Shown here piece by piece: positions 5,891 to 54,600 of a stretch of DNA of 64,000 bases. Numbering within the stretch: position 1 is the stretch's first letter; the number at the start of each line of letters is the position of its first letter. This DNA is from Macrostomum lignano (Eukaryota): NCBI GenBank assembly GCA_002269645.1, contig NIVC01000841.1, forward strand, positions 1 through 64,000, read 5' to 3'. The translations under genes and the position numbers were made by a program. The notes under the pieces are model-generated. The model saw nothing but the letters and a program-made list of their open reading frames with translations. It made no database searches and had not been told where the DNA came from.

Positions 5891-6261
5891 AGCCAGCTAG
5901 CTATACATGCAGGGCTATTTGCAGTGAACCATGCAGTTTGTACAGTGAAGAACTGAGTAAAAAATAATTTAAATCAAACAACTTTTTGCATCTCGCATGC
6001 AGTCTCTAGAATTCAGCGAGAAAATGCATATGAGCTTCAAAGTCTCTGAAGCTGTATTAAATTTATTATTTTAAATCGTCAAACGTAAAACCGATGAAGT
6101 GTTGCCGCGAAAGACATTAAAATATAGGATTTTCGAACAAAAGCTGGCGGAATTTTTTATTTATTGCCCTCATTTGTTTGGGACATTCAGCTAATCGCAT
6201 AATTTTAGGATCGATTGATTCAAAGAGAAAAGATCGACGTGAGCTCTCCGCCGATCCAAGT

Positions 6262-6618
6262 TTACCAGGTGCAAAACTTCAGCAGACACGGGGTGACGCT
6301 CGGCTTGGAGCGACGCTCCACAATCGGGCCTGGCGGTGTTGGTGCCATTGGAAAACCAGCTGGATTCTCGGCGGCGTTCCAGGGACGATTTTTAGATGGA
6401 TCGAAGTGCTCCTCGAACTGCCTCTGCTGCTGCTGCTCACGCTGGAGCATCTTCTCCTCGATGAGCAGTCGACGCATCAGCTGAACGAGCTCTGCTTGGT
6501 CGTCGGTCTCGAAAATGTGTCGGTTCGATGGCGACTTGAAAGGCCGAGCGTTCACGGCTTGATAACAGATGGCCGACAGGAGAACGAGCAGGACAATGGG
6601 ACCAGCTGCTGCTCTCAT
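6262..6618 (-). CDS. Copy 3 of secreted prepropeptide, 118 aa, mature SKPSVTPCLLKFCTW
   Basis: Intact ORF from the ATG at 6618. The upstream in-frame extension in the ORF track lies in the 5'UTR intron 6631-6704. TATAAATA at 6780-6787. Confidence 0.85.
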   Translation of the reverse strand: MRAAAGPIVLLVLLSAICYQAVNARPFKSPSNRHIFETDDQAELVQLMRRLLIEEKMLQREQQQQRQFEEHFDPSKNRPWNAAENPAGFPMAPTPPGPIVERRSKPSVTPCLLKFCTW

Positions 6619-13055: not shown

Positions 13056-37695
<24,640 letters not shown>

Positions 37696-38590
37696 CGCAG
37701 GGAGACTGTTGCTGAGTTGGAGATGGGGATGCTGAGTTTTAAATCCATCTCTTTATAGAGTCTCTCTCTCCTCTTAGATCCCTGATCGCCAACTGAAGCC
37801 GAAAAATGATAATTATTAAAAGCACCTGGCCAATAACCCATTGTCCATTGTCAGGCCAACCCAGGGCAGGATGGGGAAGGGGGTGGTGCCTGCCAGTTGC
37901 AGCTGGGGCTCATTGTCGGCACATGCCAAGGACTACTGAAATGTGCTAAGCAATAGTGGACTGGAAACTACCGTTTTGATAATTTGTCTAGATGCTCCGC
38001 AACATCTGAGTCCTCATTAATATAAACGATAATTGCAAAATTAGTTTCAAATCCAGATAGCTTAGTTTAGCACTCCTTGGCTGACAGCTATAGTAGAAGT
38101 CCATGAAAGAGCCCCCAAGCGGTCACAAGCGGTGAAGAGGTAATAAAATAAATTAATTGATTTTTCTTCTCTGCCTCTGAAACTGCCGCTACTGAGATAA
38201 CTGATTCAGTCATTGTGACTGGGAAAAATTAATTAGGCTCAGATGAAGTGTAATGGCAGGCTTATTGAATATGGACATTCTATTCTGGAAATATTTTAAA
38301 ATTCAATTGCCAGTGCAAGCAGTCGTCCTTAGTTCAATTGCATACCCGGCCTGACCCTTGTCCCCCCTTATTGCTGAATAAAAATTATAATTGCAGCAGG
38401 GCTGTGGAGCAAATATAATACAATAATAGTATTTATAAGATAAGACAAGATAATAATTGATAAGCTATTTACGTACTTGCAAACTCTGTGCAAATGCAAA
38501 TTATGCAAAGCGGTATGCAGCTTAATCTCATGAATTTTGGTGCAAAAAAGGCATTTTTTACGTGAAAAAACATCGAATTGTTTATGATGA

Positions 38591-40798
38591 TGTAACCACG
38601 CTCTGGTCGCGGGATAGGGCATGGGAACTTTTTCGAAAGTGCCTCCTATCCCGTGCACCCTCTGCACAGAGCTGTCGAGACTCGGCCAGGTCTCCGCCCA
38701 GGCCTGGAGACTCCCGCTCTGCTGCACCCCTCCTACTGCCTTGGTTCCGTCTCCCCTGCCGCCACACCTGCCTTTCCGGAGCTCCCTGTCCCTCTCTGTA
38801 CCCTCCCCTCTACCTTATCTCCCCTGCACTCCACCCTATTCTTCTTGTACTTTCCCTTAACCCCCTCTTTTTGTCTCTCTCTGCACTCTTTTCCTGCGCT
38901 GTCCCCTCCTTCTCTGTGTCTACTTACAGTATTTGGTGTGCTCACCGTCTCCCCATCCCCTCCCAAACTCCCAAACGGTGACGCAAGTCGTGTGACCCCT
39001 TCTTCCCCCCGATGACTCATCGATGACTCATCCCCCTCTCTTGCGCAACCTTTTCTCATGCTATTGTTCTCCTTCCCAAATTTCTCATGTGACACCCACC
39101 CCACCTCCGCTCCTATTGTTCTCGATTTTGATTCTTTTGTTCTCTCGACCCCCACCAATTATCACATTTTCTCCGATTTTCTCTTTCTTTTGTTCTCGTT
39201 TTCGCACCTAATTATCACCTTTTCCCCAATGTTTACTTTTCCATTGTTCTCAGTTCTCCCCAATTATCCCCGATTTCCAATTCCTTTGTTCTCGACCCCA
39301 GCCCTATTGTTCTCAATGTTTGCTTGCGCAACACTTTCGCGACCACCCGCTGCGCCAATTATCCCCCACCCCACCTCCGGATTGCGCAATTTCCCTATTT
39401 CTCATGTTGCTATGCCGGTCTCATGCTTCTCATCATGACTCATTCTGACGTCATTCTGCCGGCAGCCAATCAGAGAGAGGGAGCCATGGTAACGACCTTG
39501 AGGAGGCGGCTGTGAGGTCTATAAAAGGAAGCGATTTCGGCATGAGAATCCTCACACGGTTCAACTCTTCCTCCTTGGCGCCTCTTTGGGCTTGCCGTCA
39601 GACTGAGTTCTGACCCATTCGTCTATAAGACGAATCCCTGCCGGTCCGCGGTCTGTTACTGCCAAGTTATCCTTAGCTCCCCAAGTGAGATTGCCTATCG
39701 GCCAGCGGTCTGATACCGCCCAGCATCATCAGCATCGCCTGATCTACATCAGCGCTTCGTCGCTCCAGCGCATCGCCGCTTCACTGTCTGCCTGACTGCA
39801 GCCTACAGCCACCCTCGGTCACTCCGCCTCTCTCTCTCTCTCTGTGCAGCTGCCGGTAAGTTCCTGTTACTAATTTGTGCTCTAATTGCCTTTGCTTATC
39901 CGGGGTTTGCCTGTTTTCCATTGTCTGATTAGAGAGCTGAGCCAATTGTGATACCGTATCTTTTGCTGTATTTTACTCAATAGTGAAGTCGCTTAATCGC
40001 CTGATTATTCGCCTAAGGGCCTAATTATTAACTATTAACGAACTTCATCATTATTCAATCTTTCACCATCATTTAACTCATGGCTTGCTAAGCCTTTCTC
40101 CCGGGGTGGCAAAGCATAAGGAAGTTTGGCTAAGCTAATGGCCTCTCCCCGTGCAAAGCCCGCCTGTGAGTGCGTGCTGCGGGGCCGCGTGTGCGTGCAG
40201 TAGAGGGATTAGCGAGTCTTGGCACAGAATGGCAGTCGGAAGGTTGCAACCCCATGCTAACGCGTCCCTTCGCCCTGAGCAATCTAAACTGTAGACAGTA
40301 CATGTTCGCCTCATACTACTCTTAGTAATCAAAGTCGCAAGTCAGCCTCGCTCACAGCCACAAAGGATCCCCTGCTGAGAAATCCTCCAGATTGAGCCCA
40401 GAGTTCCCGATCATGCCCCAAGCAGAGTCCCTGTACTCGGCTGCATGCGTCTCCCCTGTTAGCCTAAATCTCCTGGTAACCATCCCAGGCGGGGCTCTAG
40501 CCTCGAGAGGTCTGGTAGAAAGATCCAGGTGCGCCAGGTCACATAGAGTGGTGGCAGCCACTCGGTCATACTATGACCGAGTGACCAACTATTGCACCTT
40601 GGCTACAGGTGGGGTCCATGTGGGTCCTTGGCCCTCTGGTCACGAAGCGCTACCAAAGCTACTAATCATGTGGGCGGGACAGTCTGGTGCTGGAGGTCCG
40701 TCAGGTCATTGCCCGGTCATAGGCAGCCTACGGTCATTGCCCCCTCTAGTCATGCGTTCGTCTCTCTACGGAGCGGACAGGCGACAAGGGCGGTTACA
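38591..40798 (+). mobile_element. Probable long solo LTR or LTR-derived segment
   Basis: Termini TGTAACC and GGTTACA form a 7-bp inverted repeat with TG...CA. Internal Pol II promoter and splice donor. No TSD or coding remnant confirmed. Confidence 0.4.
39436..39526 (+). promoter_or_regulatory. Compact promoter: AP-1, CRE, CCAAT, partial X-box, TATA
   Basis: TGACTCA 39436-39442, TGACGTCA 39446-39453, AGCCAATCA about 39464-39472, GCCATGGTAAC about 39483-39493, TATAAAA 39520-39526. Donor GTAAGT at 39856. Confidence 0.6.
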
Positions 40799-41169
40799 TC
40801 AATGAAATTCAAGAAATTTGTTAAATTAACTGTCTGGAACACCGTGCATTTCAGTTCAAAATTTATAACATTTCCCGGTTAATTAGTCCCGGAAGTAGCA
40901 AAAGTGTCACAAATCAAGTTTTTAGCTTTTTATAGATAATTTTTTACCCAATGAACCGAATCTCTAGAAATTGCACACAAATATGCCTCGTTATGTGGAA
41001 AATCAGGCGTCATAAAAATATTGCCGTCCTATTGCGTTTTTTGCCTCATTTCAAGCTAAATATTAAAAAATCGCTACTCTGATCGATTTTCAATCACTTT
41101 TTTCACACATTAGCATGAGCAGAAAAAAATGAGCATGGCCTCGGGTTCTCTCGCTCTCGGCTCGTTCAC

Positions 41170-41535
41170 TGGTGGAACTAGGGATTAGGGATTAGGAATA
41201 GAGATTAAGGCAAGGACGACTTACATGTACGAGTAAGTAACGTATATAGTGTCTACTTAAGTAGTCCTTGGATTAGGGATTAAAGATTAGAGTAGGGATT
41301 AGGAATAATGGATTAGGAATTAGGGATTAGGGATTAGAGTAGGGATTAGGAATAATGGATTAGGAATTACGGATTAGGGATTACAGTAGGGATTAGGAAT
41401 AATGGATTATGGATTAGGGATAGGGATTAGGAATTAGGTATTCGAGATAGGGATTAATGATTAGGGATTAGAGTAGATTTGGGGATTAGGGATTAAGGAT
41501 AGGGATTAGGGATTAGAGTTGGGATTAGGGTTACA
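41170..41535 (+). repeat. Degenerate telomere-like (GGGATTA/TTAGGG)n tract
   Basis: Repeats of GATTAGGG and GATTAGGA. Confidence 0.8.
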
Positions 41536-42085
41536 GTTAGGTTAGACCGTATTATTTTTGGCAGTCAAAACGCCGTAGACTCGAAAGAAGAGCCGCAGTT
41601 CGAGGTATGCAGAGTCGATCATGTCGCAATTCTGTTTCTGGTTATGACGAAGTTTTCAATAGCTCGCAGGATTTCAATTGAACCGGCCTGACCTCGTGTA
41701 TGCATCAGTTTGCAATGATCATGGAGCAACTCTACGCTAACTTTACTTCATACGGCAGAATTCCCCAGTTTAGAAGAAGCAAGGCAGCAGCGCGCACAGA
41801 TGCTAAATTTATTTATTATCTGTGGCAGCGCGTGCAGCGGCGCGGTTTACCACCCCCCCCACCCACCTTGTAATCGCCCACACATGACAGTTTTGCAAAC
41901 GTTCAAATTGACAATTTTCTCAGCAGCAAAGGCAGTAAATTATAAGCACAGGCAGCGATGCACCCAGCTGCTCAAACAGGAACTCGTGTCAAAGAGAGAG
42001 GAGCCAGACAAGAAAAAAAGTTTTGCCAGATTTCCCTGCCCAATTAAGGCGAGCAGCCAGTGAGAAGGCCGGCTCGTTCAGTCAA

Positions 42086-42091
42086 TATAAG
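42086..42091 (+). promoter_or_regulatory. Candidate TATA box of the EFLamide gene
   Basis: TATAAG about 100 bp upstream of the ATG. Confidence 0.4.
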
Positions 42092-42183
42092 GTGCAACAA
42101 TTGCTCTGCTTCGATTCCACTTGTCTTCTAGCAGCAAAATCTTCTTTCGTTTGTTATTGTTGAAAATATCAGCGGAAGATCTC

Positions 42184-42719
42184 ATGAAATCTGCACGCTT
42201 CGCTTTGATGCTGCTGATGGCGATGACGGCGGTGACTGTGGAGCCCAGGCCGTGTAAGACGAATAAGAACTTTATTGACGGTTCTGTGTGCTACACCCTT
42301 TGTTGGGTGGGTGATTAGCCAGCCAGACAGACAGACAGGCAGACACTAAGACACTAAGACAGACAGACAGACAGACACACAGAGAGACAGGCAGGCAGAC
42401 ACTAAGACAGAGAGACAGACAGACAGACACACAGACAAGACAGACAGACACACAGACAAGACAGACACACAGACACCAAGACAGACACAGAGAGGCTTAG
42501 ATTCGCTAATCAACTCCTTAATTTCACCGCATCCCCCCCCCAGTTGACACCGACCGACCCAGCCCGATAGAAAAGCGAGTGTCCGAGTTTCTAGGAAAAC
42601 GCGGCAGCCCGTGGCCGGTGCTCCCGCCGGAGGAGGAGACATCGGCTGAGGCTCTGGCCAAGTGGCTGCGCCAAAACGAGCGCCGCTACAGAAAGAGAAT
42701 CTCGGAATTTCTCGGCTGA
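42184..42719 (+). CDS. EFLamide/TRH-type neuropeptide precursor, 81 aa, 2 exons
   Basis: join(42184-42253,42544-42719) with a phase-1 GTAAGA...CCCCCAG intron. Protein: [81 protein letters not shown]. Confidence 0.85.
42320..42495. repeat. (GACA)n-type microsatellite in the neuropeptide intron
   Basis: Degenerate run. Confidence 0.85.
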
Positions 42720-43069
42720 ACGTTCTGAGCGCGTGCAGCAGGATGATCAAACTATAACAAATATTATTGATTTACAATTTCTGTTCGTGAACTAGAGCTG
42801 TATGAGCTACCCAAACATTGACAAAACATTCCAACTTGGAAACTAAATTATGCCGAATAAAGATGCGCTGGACGAATCCTGTCAGCAGGATTGAATGCTA
42901 AGATGCTTTTTACAGCTGCCCACTGTTGCAACAGAACTGCAACCTAAGCCTACGAATGCTGCGTTTGATTCGGGATGCTGATAATGACTACAGAATTATA
43001 AAAGATTTTGGGTAGCTTGCAAAGGAGCTATCAGGATCCGCTCTCCGAAGTTGGTGCCTCCTTTGTAGC

Positions 43070-43545
43070 TAGCGCCCCCTCTGTAGCTGGCGCCCTCTGT
43101 AGCTAGCGCCCCTCCCTCTGTAGCTGTATGGCGCCCCCTTAGTACTCGTAGCTGGCGCCCTCTGTAGCTAGCGCCCCTCTCTCTGTAGCTGGCGCCCTCT
43201 GTAGCTAGCGCCCCTCCCTCTGTAGCTGTATGGCGCCCCCTTAGTACTCGTAGCTGGCGCCCTCTGTAGCTAGCGCCCCTCCCTCTGTAGCTGGCGCCGC
43301 CTCTAGCTAGCGCCCCCTTAGTACTCGTAGCTGGCGCCCTCTGTAGCTAGCGCCCCTCCCTCTGTAGCTGGCGCCCCCTTTGTACTCGTGGCTGGCGCCC
43401 TCTGTAGCTGGCACCCTCTGTAGCTGGCGCCCTCTGTAGCTGGCGCCCTCTGTAGCTGGCGCCCTCTGTAGCTAGCGCCCCCTGTAGCTAGCGCCCCCTC
43501 CCTCTGTAGCTAGCGCCCCCTGTAGCTGTTTGGCCCTTTCTGTAG
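43070..43545. repeat. GGCGCC-core minisatellite CTCTGTAGCT(G/A)GCGCC
   Basis: Variable 16-20-bp units. Confidence 0.9.
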
Positions 43546-44529
43546 CCACCGCTCCTCTGTAATTGGCGCCCCCTCTGTACCTGGCGCCCCACTGTAGTCC
43601 CGTGCGCGGCCACATACATCCGCGCGGCTTATATGCACGAAAATTGATGAGGGGATCAATTTCACACCTACGAGGCCCAGCCCCCAAAAGGCACAGAGAC
43701 TGTACACGCCTGACGGTCAGAAAGTCTGGGCTGCTGTACACTCTGTGAGAGCGTGCTTAGGGCATGACTTGGCTCGCCTCTTTGCTGACTGCAAGAAAAA
43801 TTTAGCAGAAAAGTGAAGCTAAAAAACGCACCAAGAAAACAATTTGCAGTGCCTTGAACAGGAACATTAAGAGAATACTGGCAGATTGCAGACAAAATGG
43901 CAGACAACACGTAGATTAATAAATTTCATATATATTTTAGTCTGCAGTGCGTCAGTGCTGTTCCGAAGTTCCATATTTCATATTTCATATGTAAATATAT
44001 ATAATATGTCAATAAACCACAATTGACGAGATTACATTAATCATAATATACTTGGTTATTCACTAGCTTGCGACAGGGCCCCCATTTAATCCATACCAAT
44101 ACTATACAATACAAATATTAAGATGAAATAAAAATGCAATCTATTTTTATGTTGTTTTCAAAATAACTAATGTCACACTAATAATAAATATCGTTGGAAA
44201 AATAACACATTAATCATATAATACCATATACTTATACCATTCAGAGTATACTAATATTAACTAAATATGTTTCGTTTGGGACAATAAACTAGTTGGTTAG
44301 TAAATTATTAAAAAAATACAGATTTGAGAATTCATACTTGTTATTCTATTGAAACCTCTGTCAGCAAATTTGATGAAGTATTAGAGTAATAGATGAAGAA
44401 TATTTTGAATAGCACTGATGAGGGAGGCGCATAGTAGTTTTACAGATGCAATTATCATATAAGCAAGTGTAGCCTCTGATAATTTATCAATTTAAAATTA
44501 TTTATTAAATGGTGAATCAAAGAGCATTC

Positions 44530-44990
44530 CGTGAGTCATCGATGCATTTAATGAGTCATTTAAGGATTGAAGTGAGTCATCGATGCATTCAATGAGTCAT
44601 TTAAGGATTGAAGTGAGTCACCGATGCATTAATGAGTCATTTAAGGATTGAAGTGAGTCACCGATGCATTCAGTGAGTCATTTAAGGATTGAAGTGAGTC
44701 ATCGATGCATTCAATGAGTCATTTAAGGATTGAAGTGAGTCATCGATGCATTCAGTGAGTCATTTAAGGATTGAAGTGAGTCATCGATGCATTCAGTGAG
44801 TCATTTAAGGATTGAAGTGAGTCATCGATGCATTCAGTGAGTCATTTAAGGATTTAAGTGAGTCACCGATGCACTCAGTGAGTCATTAAAGGATTTAAGT
44901 GAGTCATTTAATGATTTAAGTGAGTCATTTAAAGATTTAAGTGAGTCATATTCAGTGAGCAACCAAGTGAGTCATCAGTGAGTCATCAAT
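44530..44990. repeat. 41-bp minisatellite with two TGAGTCA (AP-1) motifs per unit
   Basis: Unit GTGAGTCATCGATGCATTCAGTGAGTCATTTAAGGATTGAA. Confidence 0.92.
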
Positions 44991-45119
44991 GCTTGATAAT
45001 AGGTCACCAACTCAATAATCAGCGAGTCATGTCTTTAGAATAAATTAGCAAGCGAACCCTAAAAACCAAAGCAAAAAAGATAGAGAAAAACACAGGTATA
45101 TATGTATAAACAGCTTCTT

Positions 45120-48100
45120 TTAGAAGGCGGTCAGTTGCTGCTGCTGCTGCTGCTGGGGCGCCCTGGCCCGGCAGATGTACAGCTGCAACAGACGCCGCTT
45201 GGTGCCGCTCATATCGCCCAGATGCAGCATCAGGGAGTCGCCAACCTTGAGCTGCACCTGTACTAAGCAGAATATCGCCGCCTTTCGTATCGGCGACTCC
45301 TGATGCTCGCAGGCCCTGACCAGGCCGGGGCAGAGCTCTGCTAGCAGGCGTTCGAGCAGACCAGAGTCAGCCTCTTGAACTACTCGCATCTCCATCTTGA
45401 TTGCCGCCAAAGTGATTGGCACCTCAGAGTCCAGCACAATGGGAATGAGGACTCGGAGAATCTGATCAGCTGGCAGGCAGGCAGACAGAGCTTTGGCGCA
45501 ATCGTCCGCGGCTTTGGCTACAGACCGGTCCTGATCTCTGTGCGCTTCCAGCACCTTCAATACGGTGACCTCGACAAAGTCAACGAATCTGGCCGACTCG
45601 GCTCGGAGTAGCTCTTGCAGGGCGGACAGAGCGCAGGCTCGAATGTCACTCTGAAGGATTTGTGGGATGAAAACAGCACATTGCCGGATCAAAAGGTGGC
45701 AGTAACAAGGGTGTCAGATGAGGCGTCGATAAAAAGGGTGTCAGACAAGAGGTGTCAGATGAGACGTCAGTAAGCAGGGTGTCAGACAAGAGATGTCAGA
45801 TGAGGCGTCAGTAAACAGGGTGTCAGACAAGAGACGTCAGTAAACAGGATGTCAGACAAGAGATGTCAGTAAACAGGATGTCAGACAAGAGATGTCAGTA
45901 AAAAGGATGTCAGACAAGAGATGTCAGTAAACAGGATGTCAGACAAGAGATGTCAGTAAACAGGGTGTCAGACAAGAGATGTCAGTAAACAGGATGTCAC
46001 ACAAGAGATGTCAGTAAACAGGATGTCACACAAGAGATGTCAGTAAACAGGATGTCAGGACCAGTGTCACAATGAGTCTCACGGACTAAACAGAGACACA
46101 CAAGAGGAGGAATAAGAACACAATGATTGCCCTCAGTTCTGGGCGTGTCTTCAGTTAAATTTATTTTTACCAGGAGACACGGCTGAAAAATACGTAGCTT
46201 AACTGGCAAAAACGCCCACAAAACAAGCTGGGAACCCCCCAGCCGCCGCTCACCTCATTTTCGGACAGAGTTTCCAACAAAATTAGCAGGATATTCTTGA
46301 AGTGATCGTCCCAGTTCAACGCGGTCTTGTCACGAACCAGTCCAATTAGTCGTTGCATGCAAAACTTTCTTTGCTCGTGTCTGAGAAGGTTGGGTAGAAG
46401 CTGACAGTTAGACAGGAAAAGGTGTTGACAGCAATTTAGAATTGGCCTGCAACTTTCTTTGATGGAAGAAAACTCAAAATTTAATGACCCGAGGAAGACC
46501 AAAGCTAGCAAGCAGGTCAAGTCAATTAAAATAATCTCCAATTGAAGAGATTTTGTCAATTTAATCATTAATTAATGGGAAACTCAAAGCCCTTGGCGAA
46601 CTTGAAAAAAAACGTTGTTAGTCTGAGTCAGTTTTACAGAGACAGTCCCTGTCTCTTGGTGGGCGCCCCTGTCTCTTGGTAGAAGCCACTATCTCTTGGT
46701 AGAAGCCACTATCTCTTGGTGGGCGCCCCTGTCTCTTGGTAGAAGCCACTATCTCTTGGTGGGCGCCCCTGTCTCTTGGTAGAAGCCACTATCTCTTGGT
46801 GGGCGCCCCTGTCTCTTGGTAGAAGCCACTGTCTCTTGGTGAGCGCCCCTGTCTCTTGGTGGGCGCCCCTGTCTCTTGGTAGAAGCCACTGTCTCTTGGT
46901 GGGCGCCCCTGTCTCTTGGTAGAAGCCACTATCTCTTGGTGGGCGCCCCTGTCTCTTGGTAGAAGCCACTATCTCTTGGTGGGCGCCCCTGTCTCTTGGT
47001 AGAAGCCACTATCTCTTGGTGGGCGCCCCTGTCTCTTGGTAGAAGCCACTGTCTCTTGGTGAGCGCCCCTGTCTCTTGGTGGGCGCCCCTGTCTCTTGGT
47101 GGGCGCCCCTGTCTCTTGGTGGGCGCCCCTGTCTCTTGGTAGACGCCACTGTCTCTTGGTAGAAGCCACTGTCTCTTGGTAGACGCCACTGTCTCTTGGT
47201 AGAAGCCACTGTCTGTTGATAGAAGCCACTATCTCTTGGTAGAAGCCACTATCTCTTGGTAGAAGCCACTGTCTGTTGATAGACGCCACTGTCCCTTGGT
47301 AGAAGCCACTATCTCTTGGTAGAAGCCACTGTCTGTTGGTAGACGCCACTATCTCTCGGTAGAAGCTACTGTTTCTTGCTAGAAGCCACTGTCTCTTGGT
47401 AGACGCCACTGTCTCTTGGTAGACGCCACTGTCTCTTGGTAGACGCCACTGTCTCTTGATAGACGCCACTGTCTCTTGGTAGAAGCCACTGTCTGTTGAT
47501 AGAAGCCACTATCTCTTGGTAGAAGCCACTGTCCCTTGGTAGAAGCCACTATCTCTTGGTAGAAGCCACTGTCTGTTGGTAGAAGCCACTATCTCTCGGT
47601 AGAAGCCACTGTTTCTTGTTAGAAGCCATTGTCTCTTGGTAGAGCGATTTTGTTAGACTTTAGACTTTTGTTAGACTTTTGTTAGAGCGATTGGTAATCG
47701 CTGGGGGGGGGGTTTCAGGCCTCTCTCTGACCCCCAGCCCGCGTACACGCCAGTAATCTGAGTATTGGGTCAAGAAGCATTAGCAATAAACTATTGTATT
47801 TACTGCAGAACCAGACAAAAACAACAGAAGAGACAATCACCATTAAAAACAATTGAAAAACAATTTCTACTGTAAGATAAAAAAACACATGCTTAAAATA
47901 TAAGCAATTTTACAGACAGGCAACCCATGCAAAACATATTGATCGATTTTGTTTAGACTGAGTAATTACTATACTACTACTGTGTGCATAGAGTAGTATA
48001 TACGCAATGAAAATATAAAATTCGGTGCATTCCACTGCCAGCTGTTCTAAGGGACACAATAACCGCACTACAACAAGCCACCCGACTCTTAGGACCTCTT

Positions 48101-48365
48101 CGGCGTTAAACTGCGACTTCGCCGAGAGCAAGAGGGCGCCAGACTTTTGACTTCCTCAGCTGCAGCCCCCGCTGAGTCTGAGAATTTTGTCACCGGGCGA
48201 GAACTTCGGCTGCGACTGATTGCGCCTGCTGCCGGGCCGCGAGCTGGGACTTCCTGCCTTCTTTGGGAGCTGCAGATCAGTTGCGCACAGATGGATAGAT
48301 AGATAGATAGATAGATAGATGGATAGATAGATAGATGGATAGATAGATAGATAGATAGATAGATG

Positions 48366-48429
<64 letters not shown>

Positions 48430-48506
48430 CATAGATAGATAGATACATAGATAGATAGATGGATAGATAGATAGATAAATAGATGGATAGATAGATTAAA
48501 TAGATG

Positions 48507-48557
<51 letters not shown>

Positions 48558-48558
48558 G

Positions 48559-48617
<59 letters not shown>

Positions 48618-51600
48618 GGATAGATAGAGAGATAGATAGATAGATAGATGATAGATGATAGATAGATAGATAGATAGATGGATAGATAGTTAGATAGATG
48701 GATAGATAGATAGATGGATAGATAGATAGACAGATAGATAGATAGATAGATAGTTAGATAGATGATAGATGATAGATAGATAGATAGATAGATAGATGGA
48801 TAGATAGTTAGATAGATGGATAGATAGATAGATGGATAGATAGATAGATAGATAGATAGATAGACAGATAGATAGACAGATAGATAGAGATAGATAGATA
48901 GCTAGCTAGCTAGCAACACGGTGATATGCACTACAGATGTGGTGAAAAAAATACAATAAAACAGCAGTCGCATTCAAGCCATACATTAAGAAAACTCATT
49001 CTGGAAAAAATATTCCGAAATTCCCTCAGACCACAGCAGCTCACCGCTGATTCCTGGCGCCGGACAGCTCTCGAACAATATCTGCTAGAAGCAGATCGCC
49101 AGACTGCAGACTTTGCTGTTGCGGCTGCGGCTGCATCATCAGCTGCTGGTAGTCGTCTGCTGAAAATGGATCCGCCTGATAGCTCGGCAGCTGGTAGGCA
49201 GGCTGCTGCTGTTGATAATTTCTATTCGCAAGCCTTTGATTAGTTTGACCGTTCCTGCTACTAGTAGCGGCGGCAGCAGCAGCAGAAGCCACAGAGCGCG
49301 GCTCAGCCCAAGTGGCCCGACCAGCAGATGAAGTCCCAGTGAGACTCTGAATATCCTGAGCAGCCTGCCGGATGCAGGAGCTCATCTCTTCCGGGCTGAA
49401 ACTGGTGCCCTGCTGACTAGAGGACTGCTGACCGGCATTTCTGCGAATAAGAAATTATTTCAACTTGCAACTTGCAACAAATATCAACTTATTGAAAAAA
49501 AGAAAACAAAATCATTATTAATTTCCTAAATAACAAATTTCAAGGGAAAAAATTAACCGAAAAGGTAACGACACAGTAAATTTAAACTGTAAAGAAACAC
49601 AATTCTAAGAAAAACACAGTTTCTGGTGCAAATTTAAGAATCGCGTGCAATGAAAACTAACAATTTAAAAGCCTTTGTGAATGAGGAATAAACAACACCA
49701 ATTCTAAGGCAGAGATGACACACACAGATCTGAGGCAGAGATGACACACACACAGATCTGAGGCAGAGATGACACACACAGATCTGAGGCAGAGATGACA
49801 CACACAGATCTGAGGCAGAGATGACACACACAGATCTGAGGCAGACATGACACACACAGATCTGAGGCAGAGATGACACACACACAGATCTGAGGCAGAG
49901 ATGACACACACACAGATCTGAGGCAGAGATGACACACACAGATCTGAGGCAGAGATGACACACACACAGATCTGAGGCAGAGATGACACACACAGATCTG
50001 AGGCAGAGATGACACACACACAGATCTGAGGCAGAGATGACACACACAGATCTGAGGCAGAGATGACACACACAGATCTGAGGCAGAGATGACACACACA
50101 CAGATCTGAGGCAGAGATGACACACACACAGATCTGAGGCAGAGATGACACACACAGATCTGAGGCAGAGATGACACACACACAGATCTGAGGCAGAGAT
50201 GACACACACAGATCTGAGGCAGAGATGACACACACAGATCTGAGGCAGAGATGACACACACAGATCTGAGGCAGAGATGACACACACAGATCTGAGGCAG
50301 ACATGACACACACAGATCTGAGGCAGAGATGACACACACACAGATCTGAGGCAGAGATGACACACACAGATCTGAGGCAGAGATGACACACAGATCTGAG
50401 GCAGAGATGACACACACAGATCTGAGGCAGAGATGACACACAGATCTGAGGCAGAGATGACACACACAGATCTGAGGCAGAGATGACACACACAGATCTG
50501 AGGCAGAGATGACACACACAGATCTGAGGCAGAGATGACACACACAGATCTGAGGCAGAGATGACACACACAGATCTGAGGCAGAGATGACATGCCAAAA
50601 CCAAGAGTAAATTATTAATTATATTCATAAGCCGAAAGCTAAAAAAGCAAGTTGTGTGCAAGTGAGAATGCATGCAGAGGGCTGTATATGGATCTGCACA
50701 ATTGAAGCTCCAGATCGATAGCTAGCTGCATTAACCGGAATTTTATCGCTAGCCCCTACCTATTTGTACCATCCAAACCAGCACAACGAGCCGCAGACAC
50801 CGAGGGTCGCCTCATTGAAGCAAATAAAAATGACCTTCTGTCGTATAAAAGTGTCCAAGCGGATTTGATAAAAATTAATTAGTTGTTCAAATAAAACAGT
50901 GCATATGCTAGTTTACTAAGTAGCATATGCCTATGGAGCGATTTTATTAGCTAAGGTTGAAATCAATTCACTGGGGTATCTTATTGGTTATAATGTGTAA
51001 TGAGCATGCTTGCACCCAACACAAATGTGCTAACTAATAGAACAATGCATATAAGTAGTGTGAAACGAAAATAAAATTTAGAATACTCAAGTTTTAAATC
51101 AAATATAAAAATAACTAATTTCTTGCAAATCTTCAGCTACTCGTACTTATAACAGACTTAACTACTAAATAAGTGAAAATGCAATTTATTGAAACAAAAT
51201 TGTTGTGTTTCAATGTAAAACAAAGCAGAGTTCAAGTATGAAATTAAATATAAACTATATTTAATATTTATACTATATTTTACATTTTATATAAAATATA
51301 AAATGTCCATTAAAATGGGAGAATTCCTCACCTAAAATATCCCTTAAAATGGGAGAATTCCTCACCTAAAATATCCCTTAAAATGGGAGAATTCCTCACC
51401 TAAAATATCCCTTAAAATGGGAGAATTCCTCACCTAAAATGTCCCATAAAATGGGAGAATTCCTCACCTAAAATGTCCCTTAAAATGGGAGAATTCCTCA
51501 CCTAAAATGTCCCATAAAATGGGAGAATTCCTCACCTAAAATATCCCTTAAAATGGGAGAATTCCTCACCTAAAATGTCCCTTAAAATGGGAAAATTCCT

Positions 51601-54600
51601 CACCTAAAATGTCCTTTAAAATCGGAGAATTCCTTGCTCAAAATATCATTTGAAAATGGGAGACTTCCTCGCTCAAAATATTCAGCAAAATACTCACCGT
51701 CCAGTCCCAGAAGCGGTGGCGGCAGTTCCTAGACTGCCTCGACGCTGTTGCTGTTGCAAGCCGGCAGCGGTAGCCGACGCCTCCTGCTGATTGGCCACCA
51801 CCTCAGCCACTCTTTGCTGCATCGGGCCAGCTAGCGATTGCAGTATGTTAGCAAACGAATCGTTGTTTAATCTGGCCAAACCAGCTAGCAGCATCTGAGA
51901 GTAACGGCGCAGATCAGCAGACCTTGGCTCTCGTGTTAAAGCTGCTAGCCTCGCTACAACCGCTTTGGTGTCCGCGTTCGACTGCAGGGCGTGCGACGGC
52001 AAGTCTGGCAGTGACATCAGCAGGTGCTGCAGCACTGCTAATTGCACCTGGTGGGTGAAGTTTTTTGAATCAAACAAAAATTATATTGATTTTATACTAC
52101 CGATATTAATCTCATTAATACTTCATCTTAAAAATTGGTGACGGGTGGCCTTTTAAACTAGAGGACCATCTAGAGTGATGGGCGGCCTTTCAAAATAGAG
52201 GACCATCTAGAGTGATGGGCGGCCTTTTAAAATAGAGGACCATCTAGAGTGATGGGCGGCCTTTCAAAATAGAGGACCATCTAGAGTGATGGGCGGCCTT
52301 TCAAAATAGAGGACCATCTAGAGTGATGGGCGGCCTTTCAAAATAGAGGACCATCTAGAGTGATGGGTGGCCTTTCAAAATAGAGGACCATCTAAAGTGA
52401 TGGGCGGCCTTTCAAAATAGAGGACCATTTAGAGTGATGGGTGGCCTTTCAAAATAGAGGACCATCTAAAGTGATGGGCGTCCTTTCAAAATAGAGGACC
52501 ATCTAGAGTGATGGGCGTCCTTTCAAAATAGAGGACCATCTAGAGTGATGGGTGGCCTTTCAAAATAGAGGACCATCTAGAGTGATGGGCGGCCTTTTAA
52601 AATAGAGGACCATCTAGAGTGATGGGCGGCCTTTCAAAATAGAGGACCATCTAGAGTGATGGGCGTCCTTTCAAAATAGAGGACCATCTAGAGTGATGGG
52701 CGTCCTTTCAAAATAGAGGACCATCTAGAGTGATGGGTGGCCTTTCAAAATAGAGGACCATCTAAAGTGATGGGCGGCCTTTCAAAATAGAGGACCATTT
52801 AGAGTGATGGGTGGCCTTTCAAAATAGAGGACCATCTAAAGTGATGGGCGTCCTTTCAAAATAGAGGACCATCTAGAGTGATGGGCGTCCTTTCAAAATA
52901 GAGGACCATCTAGAGTGATGGGCGGCCTTTCAAAATAGAGGACCATCTAGAGTGATGGGTGGCCTTCCAAAATAGAGGACCATCTAGAGTGATGGGCGGC
53001 CTTAGCAGCTATTAATAAAAGGACCATCGAAGATGACGCATTGATCATCAATAAATGTGGATTATAAAAGCAAACAGATAAATTATAAAATAATAATCTA
53101 TTAAATACCTTAGGCAAAGTCTGCAGCCATTGATCGCACACAGACCTAAGCAGTTGTTGGAACTGCAATTCCGGTGGAAATGCCATTCGGACACGTTCCA
53201 GAGCGGCTTGTACTCGGCTTTGCTGACTAGTTAGCGTCTCGGTTGCTAAGCGACCAACCAGCCGCATCTGCAGCGTGTACAACCAGTCGTGCAGTTCGGC
53301 ATGAAATTTAGTAACAAATTCGCCAAGAGCTTCGAGAAAGAATTGCGTCACCCGGCCGTTGGTTTCGCCGAATAGGCGAGTAAAGATGTCGCAAATTTTT
53401 CGAACTTCGGCCGAGTTTAAACGACACGAATCGCGGCTGAGGTAGCTGGTCAGGCTGGCTAGGCCATCGCGGCGTTGGCTCCAGTCTCGAGACTCCAACT
53501 GCTTGATGATGTCCGCGATGTTCTGCGGCGATGGAGATGGTGGCGGAATGGAAAATTAGGGGGCGGATGACTGACGGATGAAGGGGCGGACGAGTGACGG
53601 ATGAAGGGGCGGACGATTGACGGATGAAGGGGCGGACGATTGACGGATGAAGGGGCGGACGAGTGACGGATGAAGGGGCGGATGACTGACGGATGAAGGG
53701 GCGGATGACTGACGGATGAAGGGGCGGATGACTGACGGATGAAGGGGCGGATGACTGACGGATGAAGGGGCGGACGAGTGACGGATGAAGGGGCGGATGA
53801 CGGACGGATGAAGGGGCGGATGATTGACGGATGACTGACGGATGAAGGGGCGGATGACTGACGGATGAAGGGGCGGATGATTGACGGATGAAGGGGCGGA
53901 TGACTGACGGATGAAGGGGCGGATGACTGACGGATGAAGGGGCGGATGACTGACGGATGAAGGGGCGGATGACTGACGGATGAAGGGGCGGATGACTGAC
54001 GGATGAAGGGGCGGATGACTGACGGATGAAGGGGCGGATGACTGACGGATGAAGGGGCGGATGACTGACGGATGAAGGGGCGGACGAGTGACGGATGAAG
54101 GGGCGGATGACGGACGGATGAAGGGGCGGATGACTGACGGATGAAGGGGCGGATGACTGACGGATGAAGGGGCGGATGACTGACGGATGAAGGGGCGGAC
54201 GAGTGACGGATGAAGGGGCGGACGAGTGACGGATGAAGGGGCGGATGACTGACGGATGAAGGGGCGGATGACTGACGGATGAAGGGGCGGATGATTGACG
54301 GATGAAGGGGCGGATGACTGGAGGATAAAGGGGCGGATGGCTGGAGGATGAAGGGGCGGATGACTGACGGATGAAGGGGGCGGATGACTGGAGGATAAAG
54401 GGGCGGATGACTGGAGGATGAAGGGGCAGATGACTGGAGGATGAAGGGGCGGATGACTGGAGGATAAAGGGGCGGATGATTGGAGGATAACTAGGTAGCT
54501 TTTGGTGCAGGTAATACAATAGTTATTCTAGTGAATGACGACACAAATTTGGTACAACATGCATGAATACCAGATTGCCTTACAAAGATATTCGAAAACA

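What the first reader, a model, noticed from the sequence alone, without database searches (positions are those of the whole stretch)
42184..42719. Hidden two-exon EFLamide (TRH-type) neuropeptide gene, missed by ORF calling
Seen: a signal peptide exon spliced in phase 1 to an exon with [10 protein letters not shown] and RKR-ISEFLG-stop, predicting amidated VSEFLamide and ISEFLamide plus a 26-aa spacer peptide. Known: xSEFL(G)amide peptides of annelids (FSEFLGamide), crustaceans (GSEFLamide) and insects (EFLamide) are the protostome TRH-type ligands. I cannot verify whether a flatworm precursor has been reported. If not, this fills a phylogenetic gap.
Basis: partly seen in the sequence, partly recalled or inferred. 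Interest (0 to 1): 0.7.

Follow-up and report, generated by a model that had tools for sequence, protein, structure and literature searches.

The report
Flatworm EFLamide neuropeptide precursor gene
This is a real two-exon gene of the flatworm Macrostomum lignano that encodes a small secreted precursor for two EFLamide/fulicin-type neuropeptides (predicted VSEFLamide and ISEFLamide); it is already in GenBank as an unnamed "hypothetical protein", so the gain is a name and a testable ligand, not a new kind of gene.

Summary
ATG 42184, donor CGT|GTAAGA at 42253/42254, acceptor C9AG| at 42543/42544 and TGA at 42717-42719 give an 81-aa product: signal peptide, [11 protein letters not shown], a spacer, then RKR-ISEFLG-stop. 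The window is Macrostomum lignano scaffold NIVC01000841.1. The gene is not hidden: it is BOX15_Mlig018869g3 (PAA76107.1), a "hypothetical protein" model from an RNA-seq-guided transcriptome, with the same splice. Two duplicate loci keep the same exons and splice sites. A search of 1.84 billion proteins found only multi-copy xSEFLG-KR / xEFVG-KR precursors. A profile search tied these to named GSEFLamide (lobster, crayfish) and fulicin (slug, snail) precursors and to nemertean, oyster, springtail and mayfly relatives. The amphipod Hyalella has the same VSEFLG and ISEFLG units. Membership in the EFLamide/fulicin family is well supported. Action on a TRH-receptor-type GPCR is inferred and was not tested here; published surveys describe such receptors in liver fluke and monogeneans. 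A polyclad "TRH2" proneuropeptide was named in 2023, so the phylogenetic gap is only partly open. Verdict: new member of a known kind, moderate interest.

The parts
42086..42091 (+). TATAAG, a possible TATA box; weak evidence only
   Evidence: Found. It lies 32 nt upstream of the 5' end of the deposited CDS feature for this copy (42118), but only about 14 nt upstream of the equivalent 5' end of copy g2. Its role is therefore uncertain.
42118..42183 (+). 5' leader contained in the deposited 'partial' CDS of BOX15_Mlig018869g3 (translated there as HLSSSSKIFFRLLLLKISAEDL)
   Evidence: L003 gene range 6001-6602 equals window 42118-42719. P0003 sequence.
42184..42253 (+). Coding exon 1: start codon, signal peptide (about residues 1-18, 42184-42237) and the first propeptide residues; it ends in phase 1
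   Evidence: n-region MKSAR, then a 14-residue hydrophobic core [14 protein letters not shown] (mean Kyte-Doolittle 2.3), with an A-V-T|V site that fits the -3/-1 rule.
42254..42543 (+). Intron, GTAAGA...C9AG, filled by a (CAGA)n microsatellite at 42320-42487
   Evidence: The intron is 290 nt here and 546 and 990 nt in the two duplicate loci, with the same splice sites.
42544..42719 (+). Coding exon 2: propeptide, two peptide units, spacer and stop codon
42573..42602 (+). [10 protein letters not shown]: unit 1, predicted mature VSEFLamide (VSEFLG = 42579-42596)
   Evidence: The same VSEFLG unit occurs five times in the Hyalella azteca precursor.
42603..42689 (+). Spacer [29 protein letters not shown], acidic then amphipathic, with an internal RR. 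It carries the only amino-acid difference among the three copies (L/P)
42690..42719 (+). RKR-ISEFLG-stop: unit 2, predicted mature ISEFLamide (ISEFLG = 42699-42716; TGA = 42717-42719)
   Evidence: The lobster and crayfish GSEFLamide precursors likewise end in ...GSEFLG followed by the stop.
42856..42861 (+). AATAAA, a candidate polyadenylation signal 137 nt after the stop
   Evidence: Pattern match only.

Best explanation
The locus is the Macrostomum lignano gene for a minimal prepropeptide of the EFLamide/GSEFLamide/fulicin family. Shown here: the gene is transcribed and spliced as read, because the deposited model was derived from RNA-seq. It exists in three near-identical copies with conserved splice sites. 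Its product begins with a signal-peptide-like segment. It carries two xSEFLG units bounded by prohormone-convertase sites. Inferred from the established chemistry of neuropeptide processing: the signal peptide is removed in the ER. Convertases cut after EKR, KR and RKR. A carboxypeptidase trims the basic residues of unit 1, while unit 2 ends at the stop codon and needs no trimming. Peptidylglycine alpha-amidating monooxygenase then turns the C-terminal Gly into an amide, giving VSEFL-NH2 and ISEFL-NH2. Inferred by homology: these peptides are released from neurons and activate a TRH-receptor/EFLGamide-receptor-clade GPCR. This is the pairing shown for FSEFLGamide in Platynereis, EFLamide in Locusta and ELFamides in C. 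elegans. My estimates: family membership about 0.9, amidated pentapeptides as products about 0.85, a TRHR-clade receptor as target about 0.65.
For: Sequence and splice.

Deposited models: identical spliced proteins are PAA76107.1 (this scaffold), PAA85705.1, PAA49470.1, A0A1I8IUX7 and A0A1I8JID1. The window is NIVC01000841.1, and L003 matches it at 100%. The GenBank annotation is a genome-guided RNA-seq transcriptome (PMC5730564).

Duplicate loci: the open frame and GT..AG sites are kept while intron length varies from 290 to 990 nt. The copies show four synonymous differences and one non-synonymous difference, which lies in the spacer.

Chance: two flanked EFLG units were observed against 0.015 expected.

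Exhaustive phmmer over 1.84e9 proteins: apart from the gene itself, seven of the eight hits are multi-copy xSEFLG-KR, xEFLG-KR or REFVG-KR precursors; the best has E = 2e-6.

Profile search: it retrieves 'GSEFLamide' (Homarus, Cherax), 'Fulicin' (Deroceras, Biomphalaria) and fulicin-like proteins (Centruroides, Argiope). It also retrieves Orchesella, Ephemera, Tubulanus and Ostrea.

Non-circular test: an HMM of 12 named members without the flatworm scores it 17.0 bits, against a maximum of 8.3 bits in 20,000 shuffles.

Receptor side, literature only: Fasciola BN1106_s2682B000166 has Platynereis EFLGamide receptor 1 as its best hit (E 7.6e-84). Monogenean GPCRs fall in the TRH-EFLG cluster. Ligand-receptor pairings in other phyla are summarised in PMC7294237 and PMC8398477.
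Against: No peptide, expression-site or receptor data exist for this gene. I did not find or test a TRHR-clade receptor in M. lignano.

Similarity to other family members is confined to the short repeated unit and its cleavage sites. Convergence therefore cannot be excluded on sequence alone.

The three copies are 98-99% identical in exons and flanks alike, so they carry no usable signal of purifying selection.

The signal peptide was judged by rules and hydropathy, not by a trained predictor. Pfam has no model that matches.
Confidence: 0.8

Rival explanations
1. It is a genuine EFLamide/fulicin-type peptide gene, but the peptides signal through something other than a TRHR-clade GPCR, for example another rhodopsin-type GPCR or a peptide-gated DEG/ENaC channel.
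For: The receptor was not examined here. Peptide-gated DEG/ENaC channels exist in spiralians, and M. lignano has orphan channels next to the FaNaC clade (PMC9234716). A DEG/ENaC exon lies 19 kb upstream in this window, though nothing links the two.
Against: Every deorphanised EFLamide/EFLGamide/ELFamide peptide cited pairs with a TRHR ortholog. Flatworms keep clear orthologs of that receptor.
Confidence: 0.13
2. It is a lineage-specific secreted peptide gene whose xSEFLG units resemble EFLamide by convergence, not descent.
For: Similarity is limited to about 8-10 residues per unit, and short amidated motifs can arise repeatedly.
Against: The six-residue units VSEFLG and ISEFLG are identical to those of an amphipod precursor. 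The S-E-F-L-G core is shared with oyster, lobster, springtail and scorpion precursors. The terminal G-stop layout is shared with lobster and crayfish. The matching receptor clade is present in the phylum.
Confidence: 0.05
3. It is a chance reading frame or a non-functional transcript with no peptide product.
For: The gene is tiny and its neighbourhood is rich in repeats that make spurious ORFs.
Against: Flanked units occur far above chance. The signal peptide, cleavage sites and amidation glycines appear together. The frame is intact in all three copies. The gene models are transcript-derived. The library-wide E-value is 2e-6.
Confidence: 0.02

Closest known systems
Crustacean GSEFLamide precursors (Homarus americanus A0A3S7UNF4 'GSEFLamide isoform 3'; Cherax quadricarinatus 'GSEFLamide')
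   Same: Signal peptide. xSEFLG units between KR sites that would give x-S-E-F-L-amide. The last unit ends directly at the stop codon.
   Different: 15-16 units in 326-335 aa against 2 units in 81 aa. Gly rather than Val or Ile precedes Ser.
Amphipod precursor of Hyalella azteca (deposited as 'protein PRQFV-amide'), with unnamed relatives P0006, P0009 and P0016
   Same: Units are ARVSEFLG and ARISEFLG, the same VSEFLG and ISEFLG hexapeptides as here. P0006 is the best library-wide hit, E 2e-6.
   Different: Many copies, a long N-terminal region with other candidate peptides, and an arthropod origin. The identity of V/I at that position may be coincidental.
Molluscan fulicin precursors (Deroceras reticulatum A0A1X9WED3; Crassostrea gigas Cragi-fulicin with (F/Y)S(E/D)FLamide)
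   Same: S-E-F-L-amide core, dibasic processing and amidation. [quoted passage not shown]
   Different: In oyster the fulicin precursor is one of three alternatively spliced products of a gene that also encodes Mytilus-inhibitory (FVamide) peptides. No FVamide-type exon lies near the flatworm gene. Fulicin itself carries a D-residue at position 2; whether the flatworm peptides do is unknown.
Annelid FVa/EFLGa precursor (Platynereis dumerilii, Capitella teleta; FSEFLGamide)
   Same: S-E-F-L-G sequence. This is the ligand whose receptor was shown to be a TRH-receptor ortholog.
   Different: The annelid peptide keeps an extra Gly (EFLG-amide). Its coding region lies after the stop codon of the FVamide ORF, without its own Met or signal peptide. 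The flatworm gene has its own start codon and signal peptide, and would give EFL-amide as in arthropods.
Insect EFLamide (Locusta migratoria; Pyrrhocoris apterus) and C. elegans TRH-1 ELFamides
   Same: Low copy number occurs here too: Pyrrhocoris has a single TVGTEFLG unit. The receptor is a TRHR ortholog.
   Different: In Pyrrhocoris the unit is an alternatively spliced exon of the Prohormone-4 gene. The nematode core is E-L-F, not E-F-L.
Polyclad flatworm 'TRH'/'TRH2' proneuropeptides (Prostheceraeus crozieri larval atlas, PMC10396302)
   Same: Same phylum, and by its name presumably the same family. TRH2 marks ciliary (cilio-motor) neurons.

Membership tests
EFLamide / GSEFLamide / fulicin (protostome TRH-type) neuropeptide precursors | N-terminal signal peptide on a small secretory precursor | tested here: met
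   n-region MKSAR, a 14-residue hydrophobic core (mean Kyte-Doolittle 2.3; the rest of the protein stays at or below 0.43) and an AVT|V cleavage candidate. This is a rule-based judgement; no trained predictor was available.
EFLamide / GSEFLamide / fulicin (protostome TRH-type) neuropeptide precursors | Repeated units with core E-[F/L]-[L/F/V] followed by Gly and flanked by basic cleavage sites | tested here: met
   [11 protein letters not shown] and RKR-ISEFLG-stop. The core signature is as stated in PMC8398477.
EFLamide / GSEFLamide / fulicin (protostome TRH-type) neuropeptide precursors | Statistically significant sequence similarity to accepted members | tested here: met
   phmmer E 2e-6 to 5e-4 against a library of 1.84e9 proteins, with all family-type hits. 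Those hits are linked to named GSEFLamide and fulicin proteins. An HMM of 12 named members, built without the flatworm, gives 17.0 bits against at most 8.3 bits in 20,000 shuffles.
EFLamide / GSEFLamide / fulicin (protostome TRH-type) neuropeptide precursors | Transcribed and spliced to give the predicted reading frame | tested here: met
   Indirect. The deposited models with this junction come from an RNA-seq-guided transcriptome assembly. I did not see reads.
EFLamide / GSEFLamide / fulicin (protostome TRH-type) neuropeptide precursors | Mature C-terminally amidated peptides present in the animal | not testable with these tools
   Needs peptidomics. Expected [M+H]+ values are 593.3293 and 607.3450.
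TRH-type signalling system (ligand of a TRHR/EFLGaR-clade GPCR) | A TRHR/EFLGamide-receptor ortholog in the same genome | not tested
   No M. lignano proteome can be searched directly. A database search with human TRHR (my recalled sequence was checked against PDB 7WKD) would list only the best 120 hits, which I expected to be vertebrate receptors, so I did not spend it. Literature: an ortholog in Fasciola hepatica (best hit Platynereis EFLGamide receptor 1, E 7.6e-84) and in monogeneans.
TRH-type signalling system (ligand of a TRHR/EFLGaR-clade GPCR) | The peptide activates that receptor at physiological concentration | not testable with these tools
   Needs a cell-based receptor assay.

The most novel reading that the evidence does not exclude
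VSEFLamide and ISEFLamide would be the first sequence-defined flatworm ligands for the TRHR/EFLGamide-receptor orthologs that free-living and parasitic flatworms (liver fluke, monogeneans) retain as orphans. In addition, the stand-alone two-unit gene, with its own signal peptide and no FVamide partner, would suggest that the shared FVamide/EFLGamide gene of annelids and bivalves is a later trochozoan fusion, not the ancestral spiralian state.
Probability: 0.4. Interest if true: 0.5.

Novelty: new member of a known kind. Interest (0 to 1): 0.35.

Why it matters
A meaningful name can now be given to a gene that three GenBank entries call 'hypothetical protein' and two UniProt entries name misleadingly.

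In 2018 the flatworm TRH-like receptors were reported without any known flatworm ligand. This gene gives a concrete pair of peptides to synthesise and test, in M. lignano (a transgenic, RNAi-amenable model) and on the orthologous receptor of Fasciola.

It also adds a data point on how the EFLamide gene was organised in early spiralians. The gain is incremental: the family is widespread in protostomes, and a polyclad 'TRH2' precursor has already been named.

Tried and rejected
1. A word-indexed database search with the 81-aa precursor alone returned only the gene's own cluster. The family appeared only with the exhaustive search and the profile search.
2. I looked for the polyclad TRH/TRH2 sequences in the supplement of PMC10396302 and found none held. 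Supplements of the monogenean and Fasciola GPCR papers give identifiers and BLAST tables but no sequences. I therefore had no flatworm receptor to use as a query.
3. I validated a recalled human TRHR sequence but did not spend a database search on it, for the listing-limit reason given in the membership test.
4. A selection test on the three gene copies has no power: exons and flanks are equally 98-99% identical.
5. Pfam has no model for the precursor.
6. The bacterial-type promoter/terminator scan is irrelevant for this eukaryote and found nothing useful.
7. I searched for an FVamide-type partner exon around the gene, as in annelids and oyster. Only two chance matches turned up elsewhere in the window.
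8. The organisms of the unnamed hits (L004-L010) could not be identified from run accessions alone.
9. Literature searches for VSEFL, ISEFL, SEFLGKR, Mlig018869, or Macrostomum together with TRH receptor or EFLa found no prior naming of this gene.

Full report
**1. What is in the sequence**

- An ATG at 42184 opens a 70-nt coding segment that ends at 42253, before a consensus donor (CGT|GTAAGA).
- 290 nt further on, a run of nine C followed by AG (42533-42543) precedes a 176-nt segment that ends in TGA at 42717-42719.
- Joining the two in phase 1 gives 246 nt, coding 81 aa: [81 protein letters not shown].
- The intron is mostly a (CAGA)n microsatellite at 42320-42487.
- The unspliced frame runs into stop codons, and a plain ORF list does not show the gene.
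- A TATAAG lies at 42086 and an AATAAA at 42856. Both are pattern matches only.

**2. More than chance**

Across all six frames of the 64-kb window there are exactly two EFLG tetrapeptides.
- Both are in this frame, 120 nt apart.
- Each has basic residues upstream and either KR or the stop codon downstream.
- In 200 shuffles of the window, such flanked units averaged 0.015 per window and never exceeded one.
- The N-terminus has the three-part layout of a signal peptide: basic MKSAR, a 14-residue hydrophobic core with mean Kyte-Doolittle 2.3, and an A-V-T|V site. Nothing downstream of residue 25 is hydrophobic. This is a rule-based judgement.

**3. Organism and database status**

- A protein search with the 81-aa product returned one cluster at 99% identity, from Macrostomum lignano.
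- Its members are PAA85705.1, PAA49470.1 and PAA76107.1 (BOX15_Mlig018869g1, g2 and g3, 'hypothetical protein, partial') and UniProt A0A1I8IUX7 and A0A1I8JID1, which are auto-named 'PSCyt2 domain-containing protein'.
- Fetching the encoding contigs showed that locus L003 (NIVC01000841.1:36118-48719) is 100% identical to window 36118-48719. The window is therefore the first 64 kb of that scaffold of assembly Mlig_3_7, and the gene here is copy g3, with its CDS feature at 42118-42719.
- The deposited proteins carry the same exon junction (…EPRPFDTDRP…). They begin with a translated 5' leader, as transcript-derived ORFs do.
- The genome paper states that the GenBank annotation is a genome-guided transcriptome built from RNA-seq with StringTie/TACO plus a de novo assembly (PMC5730564).
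The gene is 'hidden' only in the sense that nobody has named it.

**4. Duplicate loci**

- Two further loci (L001 on NIVC01000307.1 and L002 on NIVC01003869.1) have the same neighbours: a TRPM-like channel gene upstream and a CLASP/HEAT-repeat gene downstream, both on the opposite strand.
- All three copies keep the start codon, GTAAGA donor, C-rich acceptor and stop codon. The intron is 290, 546 or 990 nt long because the microsatellite varies.
- The coding sequences differ at four synonymous sites and one non-synonymous site (Leu/Pro in the spacer).
- Flanks are as similar (98-99%) as exons, which fits the recent duplication described for this line. The copies show that the frame is intact everywhere, but they cannot demonstrate selection.

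**5. Family assignment**

*Exhaustive search.* An exhaustive phmmer search of 1.84 billion representative proteins found nine hits with E < 0.001: the gene itself, one spurious plant protein, and seven multi-copy precursors.
- Two are built of [12 protein letters not shown] and ARISEFLG units (E 2e-6 and 1e-4).
- One has YSEFLG and FNEFLG units, one has YGEFLG units, and three have IREFVG or LRDFVG units.
- These seven carry no names.

*Profile search.* I aligned four of them with the flatworm protein and searched the larger named collection.
- The profile retrieved 310 proteins; the best 120 were listed.
- They include 'GSEFLamide isoform 3' of Homarus americanus, 'GSEFLamide' of Cherax quadricarinatus, 'Fulicin' of Deroceras reticulatum and 'Fulicin-like precursor' of Biomphalaria glabrata.
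- They also include 'fulicin peptides-like' proteins of a scorpion and a spider, and unnamed proteins of a springtail, a mayfly, a copepod, a horseshoe crab, an oyster and the nemertean Tubulanus.
- The only named flatworm protein in the list is the M. lignano one.

*What the named sequences show*.
- Arthropods mostly have GSEFLG units.
- The amphipod Hyalella azteca has VSEFLG five times and ISEFLG twice, the same hexapeptides as here.
- The oyster has Y/FSEFLG.
- The lobster and crayfish precursors end, like this one, with a unit immediately followed by the stop codon.

*Non-circular check.* The flatworm sequence was part of the search profile. As an independent check I built an HMM from twelve named members only. 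It scores the flatworm protein 17.0 bits, while the best of 20,000 composition-matched shuffles reaches 8.3 bits. No Pfam model exists for the family.

**6. How it most likely works**

The mechanism is given in full under the best explanation. In brief:
- *Shown:* a transcribed, spliced gene for a signal-peptide-bearing protein with two xSEFLG units at convertase sites.
- *Inferred from standard neuropeptide processing:* the products are VSEFL-NH2 and ISEFL-NH2, with expected [M+H]+ of 593.3293 and 607.3450. A 15-residue N-terminal propeptide and a 26- or 29-residue acidic spacer are by-products.
- *Inferred by homology:* release from neurons and action on a TRH-receptor-clade GPCR. The papers I read state that EFLGamide activates the Platynereis TRH-receptor ortholog, that Locusta EFLamide activates its EFLa receptor, and that C. 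elegans ELFamides activate a TRHR ortholog and promote growth.

**7. The receptor side**

- I could not search the M. lignano proteome, so I did not test whether this species has the receptor.
- Published surveys show the clade exists in the phylum. A Fasciola hepatica GPCR (BN1106_s2682B000166) has Platynereis 'EFLGamide receptor 1' as its best hit at E 7.6e-84 and carries the InterPro TRH-receptor signature.
- Two monogeneans have GPCRs in the TRH-EFLG cluster.

**8. Differences from the closest known forms**

- The flatworm precursor has the fewest units (two) and is the shortest (81 aa) of the family members I read. Single- or low-copy forms exist in insects.
- It would give EFL-amide as in arthropods and oyster, not the Gly-extended EFLG-amide of annelids.
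- In annelids the EFLG region lies behind the stop codon of an FVamide ORF and has no start codon or signal peptide of its own.
- In oyster the fulicin precursor is one of three splice forms of a gene that also encodes FVamide-type Mytilus inhibitory peptides.
- I saw the same layout in an unnamed marine contig: an FVamide ORF, a stop, 58 nt, then the EFLG ORF, with a second product that has the same signal peptide joined directly to the EFLG part.
- The flatworm gene has its own signal-peptide exon, and no FVamide-type exon occurs anywhere near it.

**9. Novelty**

- No paper in the searchable library contains VSEFL- or ISEFL-type flatworm peptides or the gene identifier, or links Macrostomum with EFLamide or a TRH receptor.
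- Other M. lignano propeptides have been used by their Mlig identifiers.
- However, a 2023 single-cell atlas reports 'TRH' and 'TRH2' proneuropeptides in the larva of the polyclad Prostheceraeus crozieri, with TRH2 in ciliary neurons. A 2026 review lists TRH among polyclad peptides.
- The finding is therefore a new, sequence-defined member of a known family in a phylum where the family has been mentioned but, as far as I could find, not shown.

**10. Verdict**

Novelty: new member of a known kind. Interest is moderate (0.35). A specialist would not be surprised, but the gene supplies concrete peptides for deorphanising flatworm TRH-like receptors.

Noticed in passing
window 33126-36656 (-): A 1176-aa ORF of a Ty3/gypsy-type retroelement with a zinc knuckle, reverse transcriptase, RNase H and the integrase zinc-binding domain. 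No integrase core domain was detected, so it may be truncated. It lies inside or beside the TRPM-like gene region.
   Followed up: partly
window 23268-24005 (+): A 245-aa ORF that matches the N-terminal part of the amiloride-sensitive sodium channel family (PF00858, E 1e-10). It is probably the first large exon of a DEG/ENaC channel gene. M. lignano channels next to the FaNaC clade remain without a known peptide ligand (PMC9234716).
   Followed up: partly
window 38588-40801: About 2.2 kb between the TRPM-like gene and the neuropeptide gene is present in this copy but absent from both duplicate loci (L001, L002). It has a strong negative GC skew and no Pfam hit in its ORFs. It is probably a copy-specific insertion.
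   Followed up: no
window 41270-41530: About 38 copies of the 7-mer GGATTAG (a TTAGGGA, telomere-like repeat) about 650 bp upstream of the neuropeptide gene.
   Followed up: no
window 13476-15213, 27269-29974, 49634-50673, 52947-54519, 43060-43527, 44531-44949: Several long mini- and microsatellite arrays produce long spurious ORFs on both strands. The 134-aa antisense ORF at 42346-42750, which overlaps the gene's intron and exon 2, is of the same kind.
   Followed up: partly
L008 171-1931 (Logan ERR1711988); proteins P0007, P0017: An unnamed contig, probably from a marine sample, carries a signal-peptide-bearing FVamide precursor ORF with many RTMFVGKR units. After a stop and 58 nt comes an ORF of YSEFLG-KR units. 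A second product (P0017) has the same signal peptide joined directly to the EFLG part. This reproduces the shared FVamide/EFLGamide gene layout described for annelids and oyster.
   Followed up: partly
database entries seen: Several clear xSEFLG-KR precursors carry misleading names: 'PSCyt2 domain-containing protein' (M. lignano, UniProt), 'protein PRQFV-amide' (Hyalella), 'Ribosome-binding protein 1(-like)' (Penaeus, Eriocheir, Armadillidium, Macrobrachium) and 'enterin neuropeptides-like' (Palaemon, Tigriopus).
   Followed up: no
L007 831-1253 (Logan ERR14224706); protein P0008: A short precursor of unknown origin resembles the flatworm protein beyond the peptide unit: …TVPSTGDDARPLLEKRIMEFLGKR… against …[26 protein letters not shown]…. 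It appears to start just after a splice acceptor, which hints at a similar signal-peptide-exon/peptide-exon structure.
   Followed up: partly
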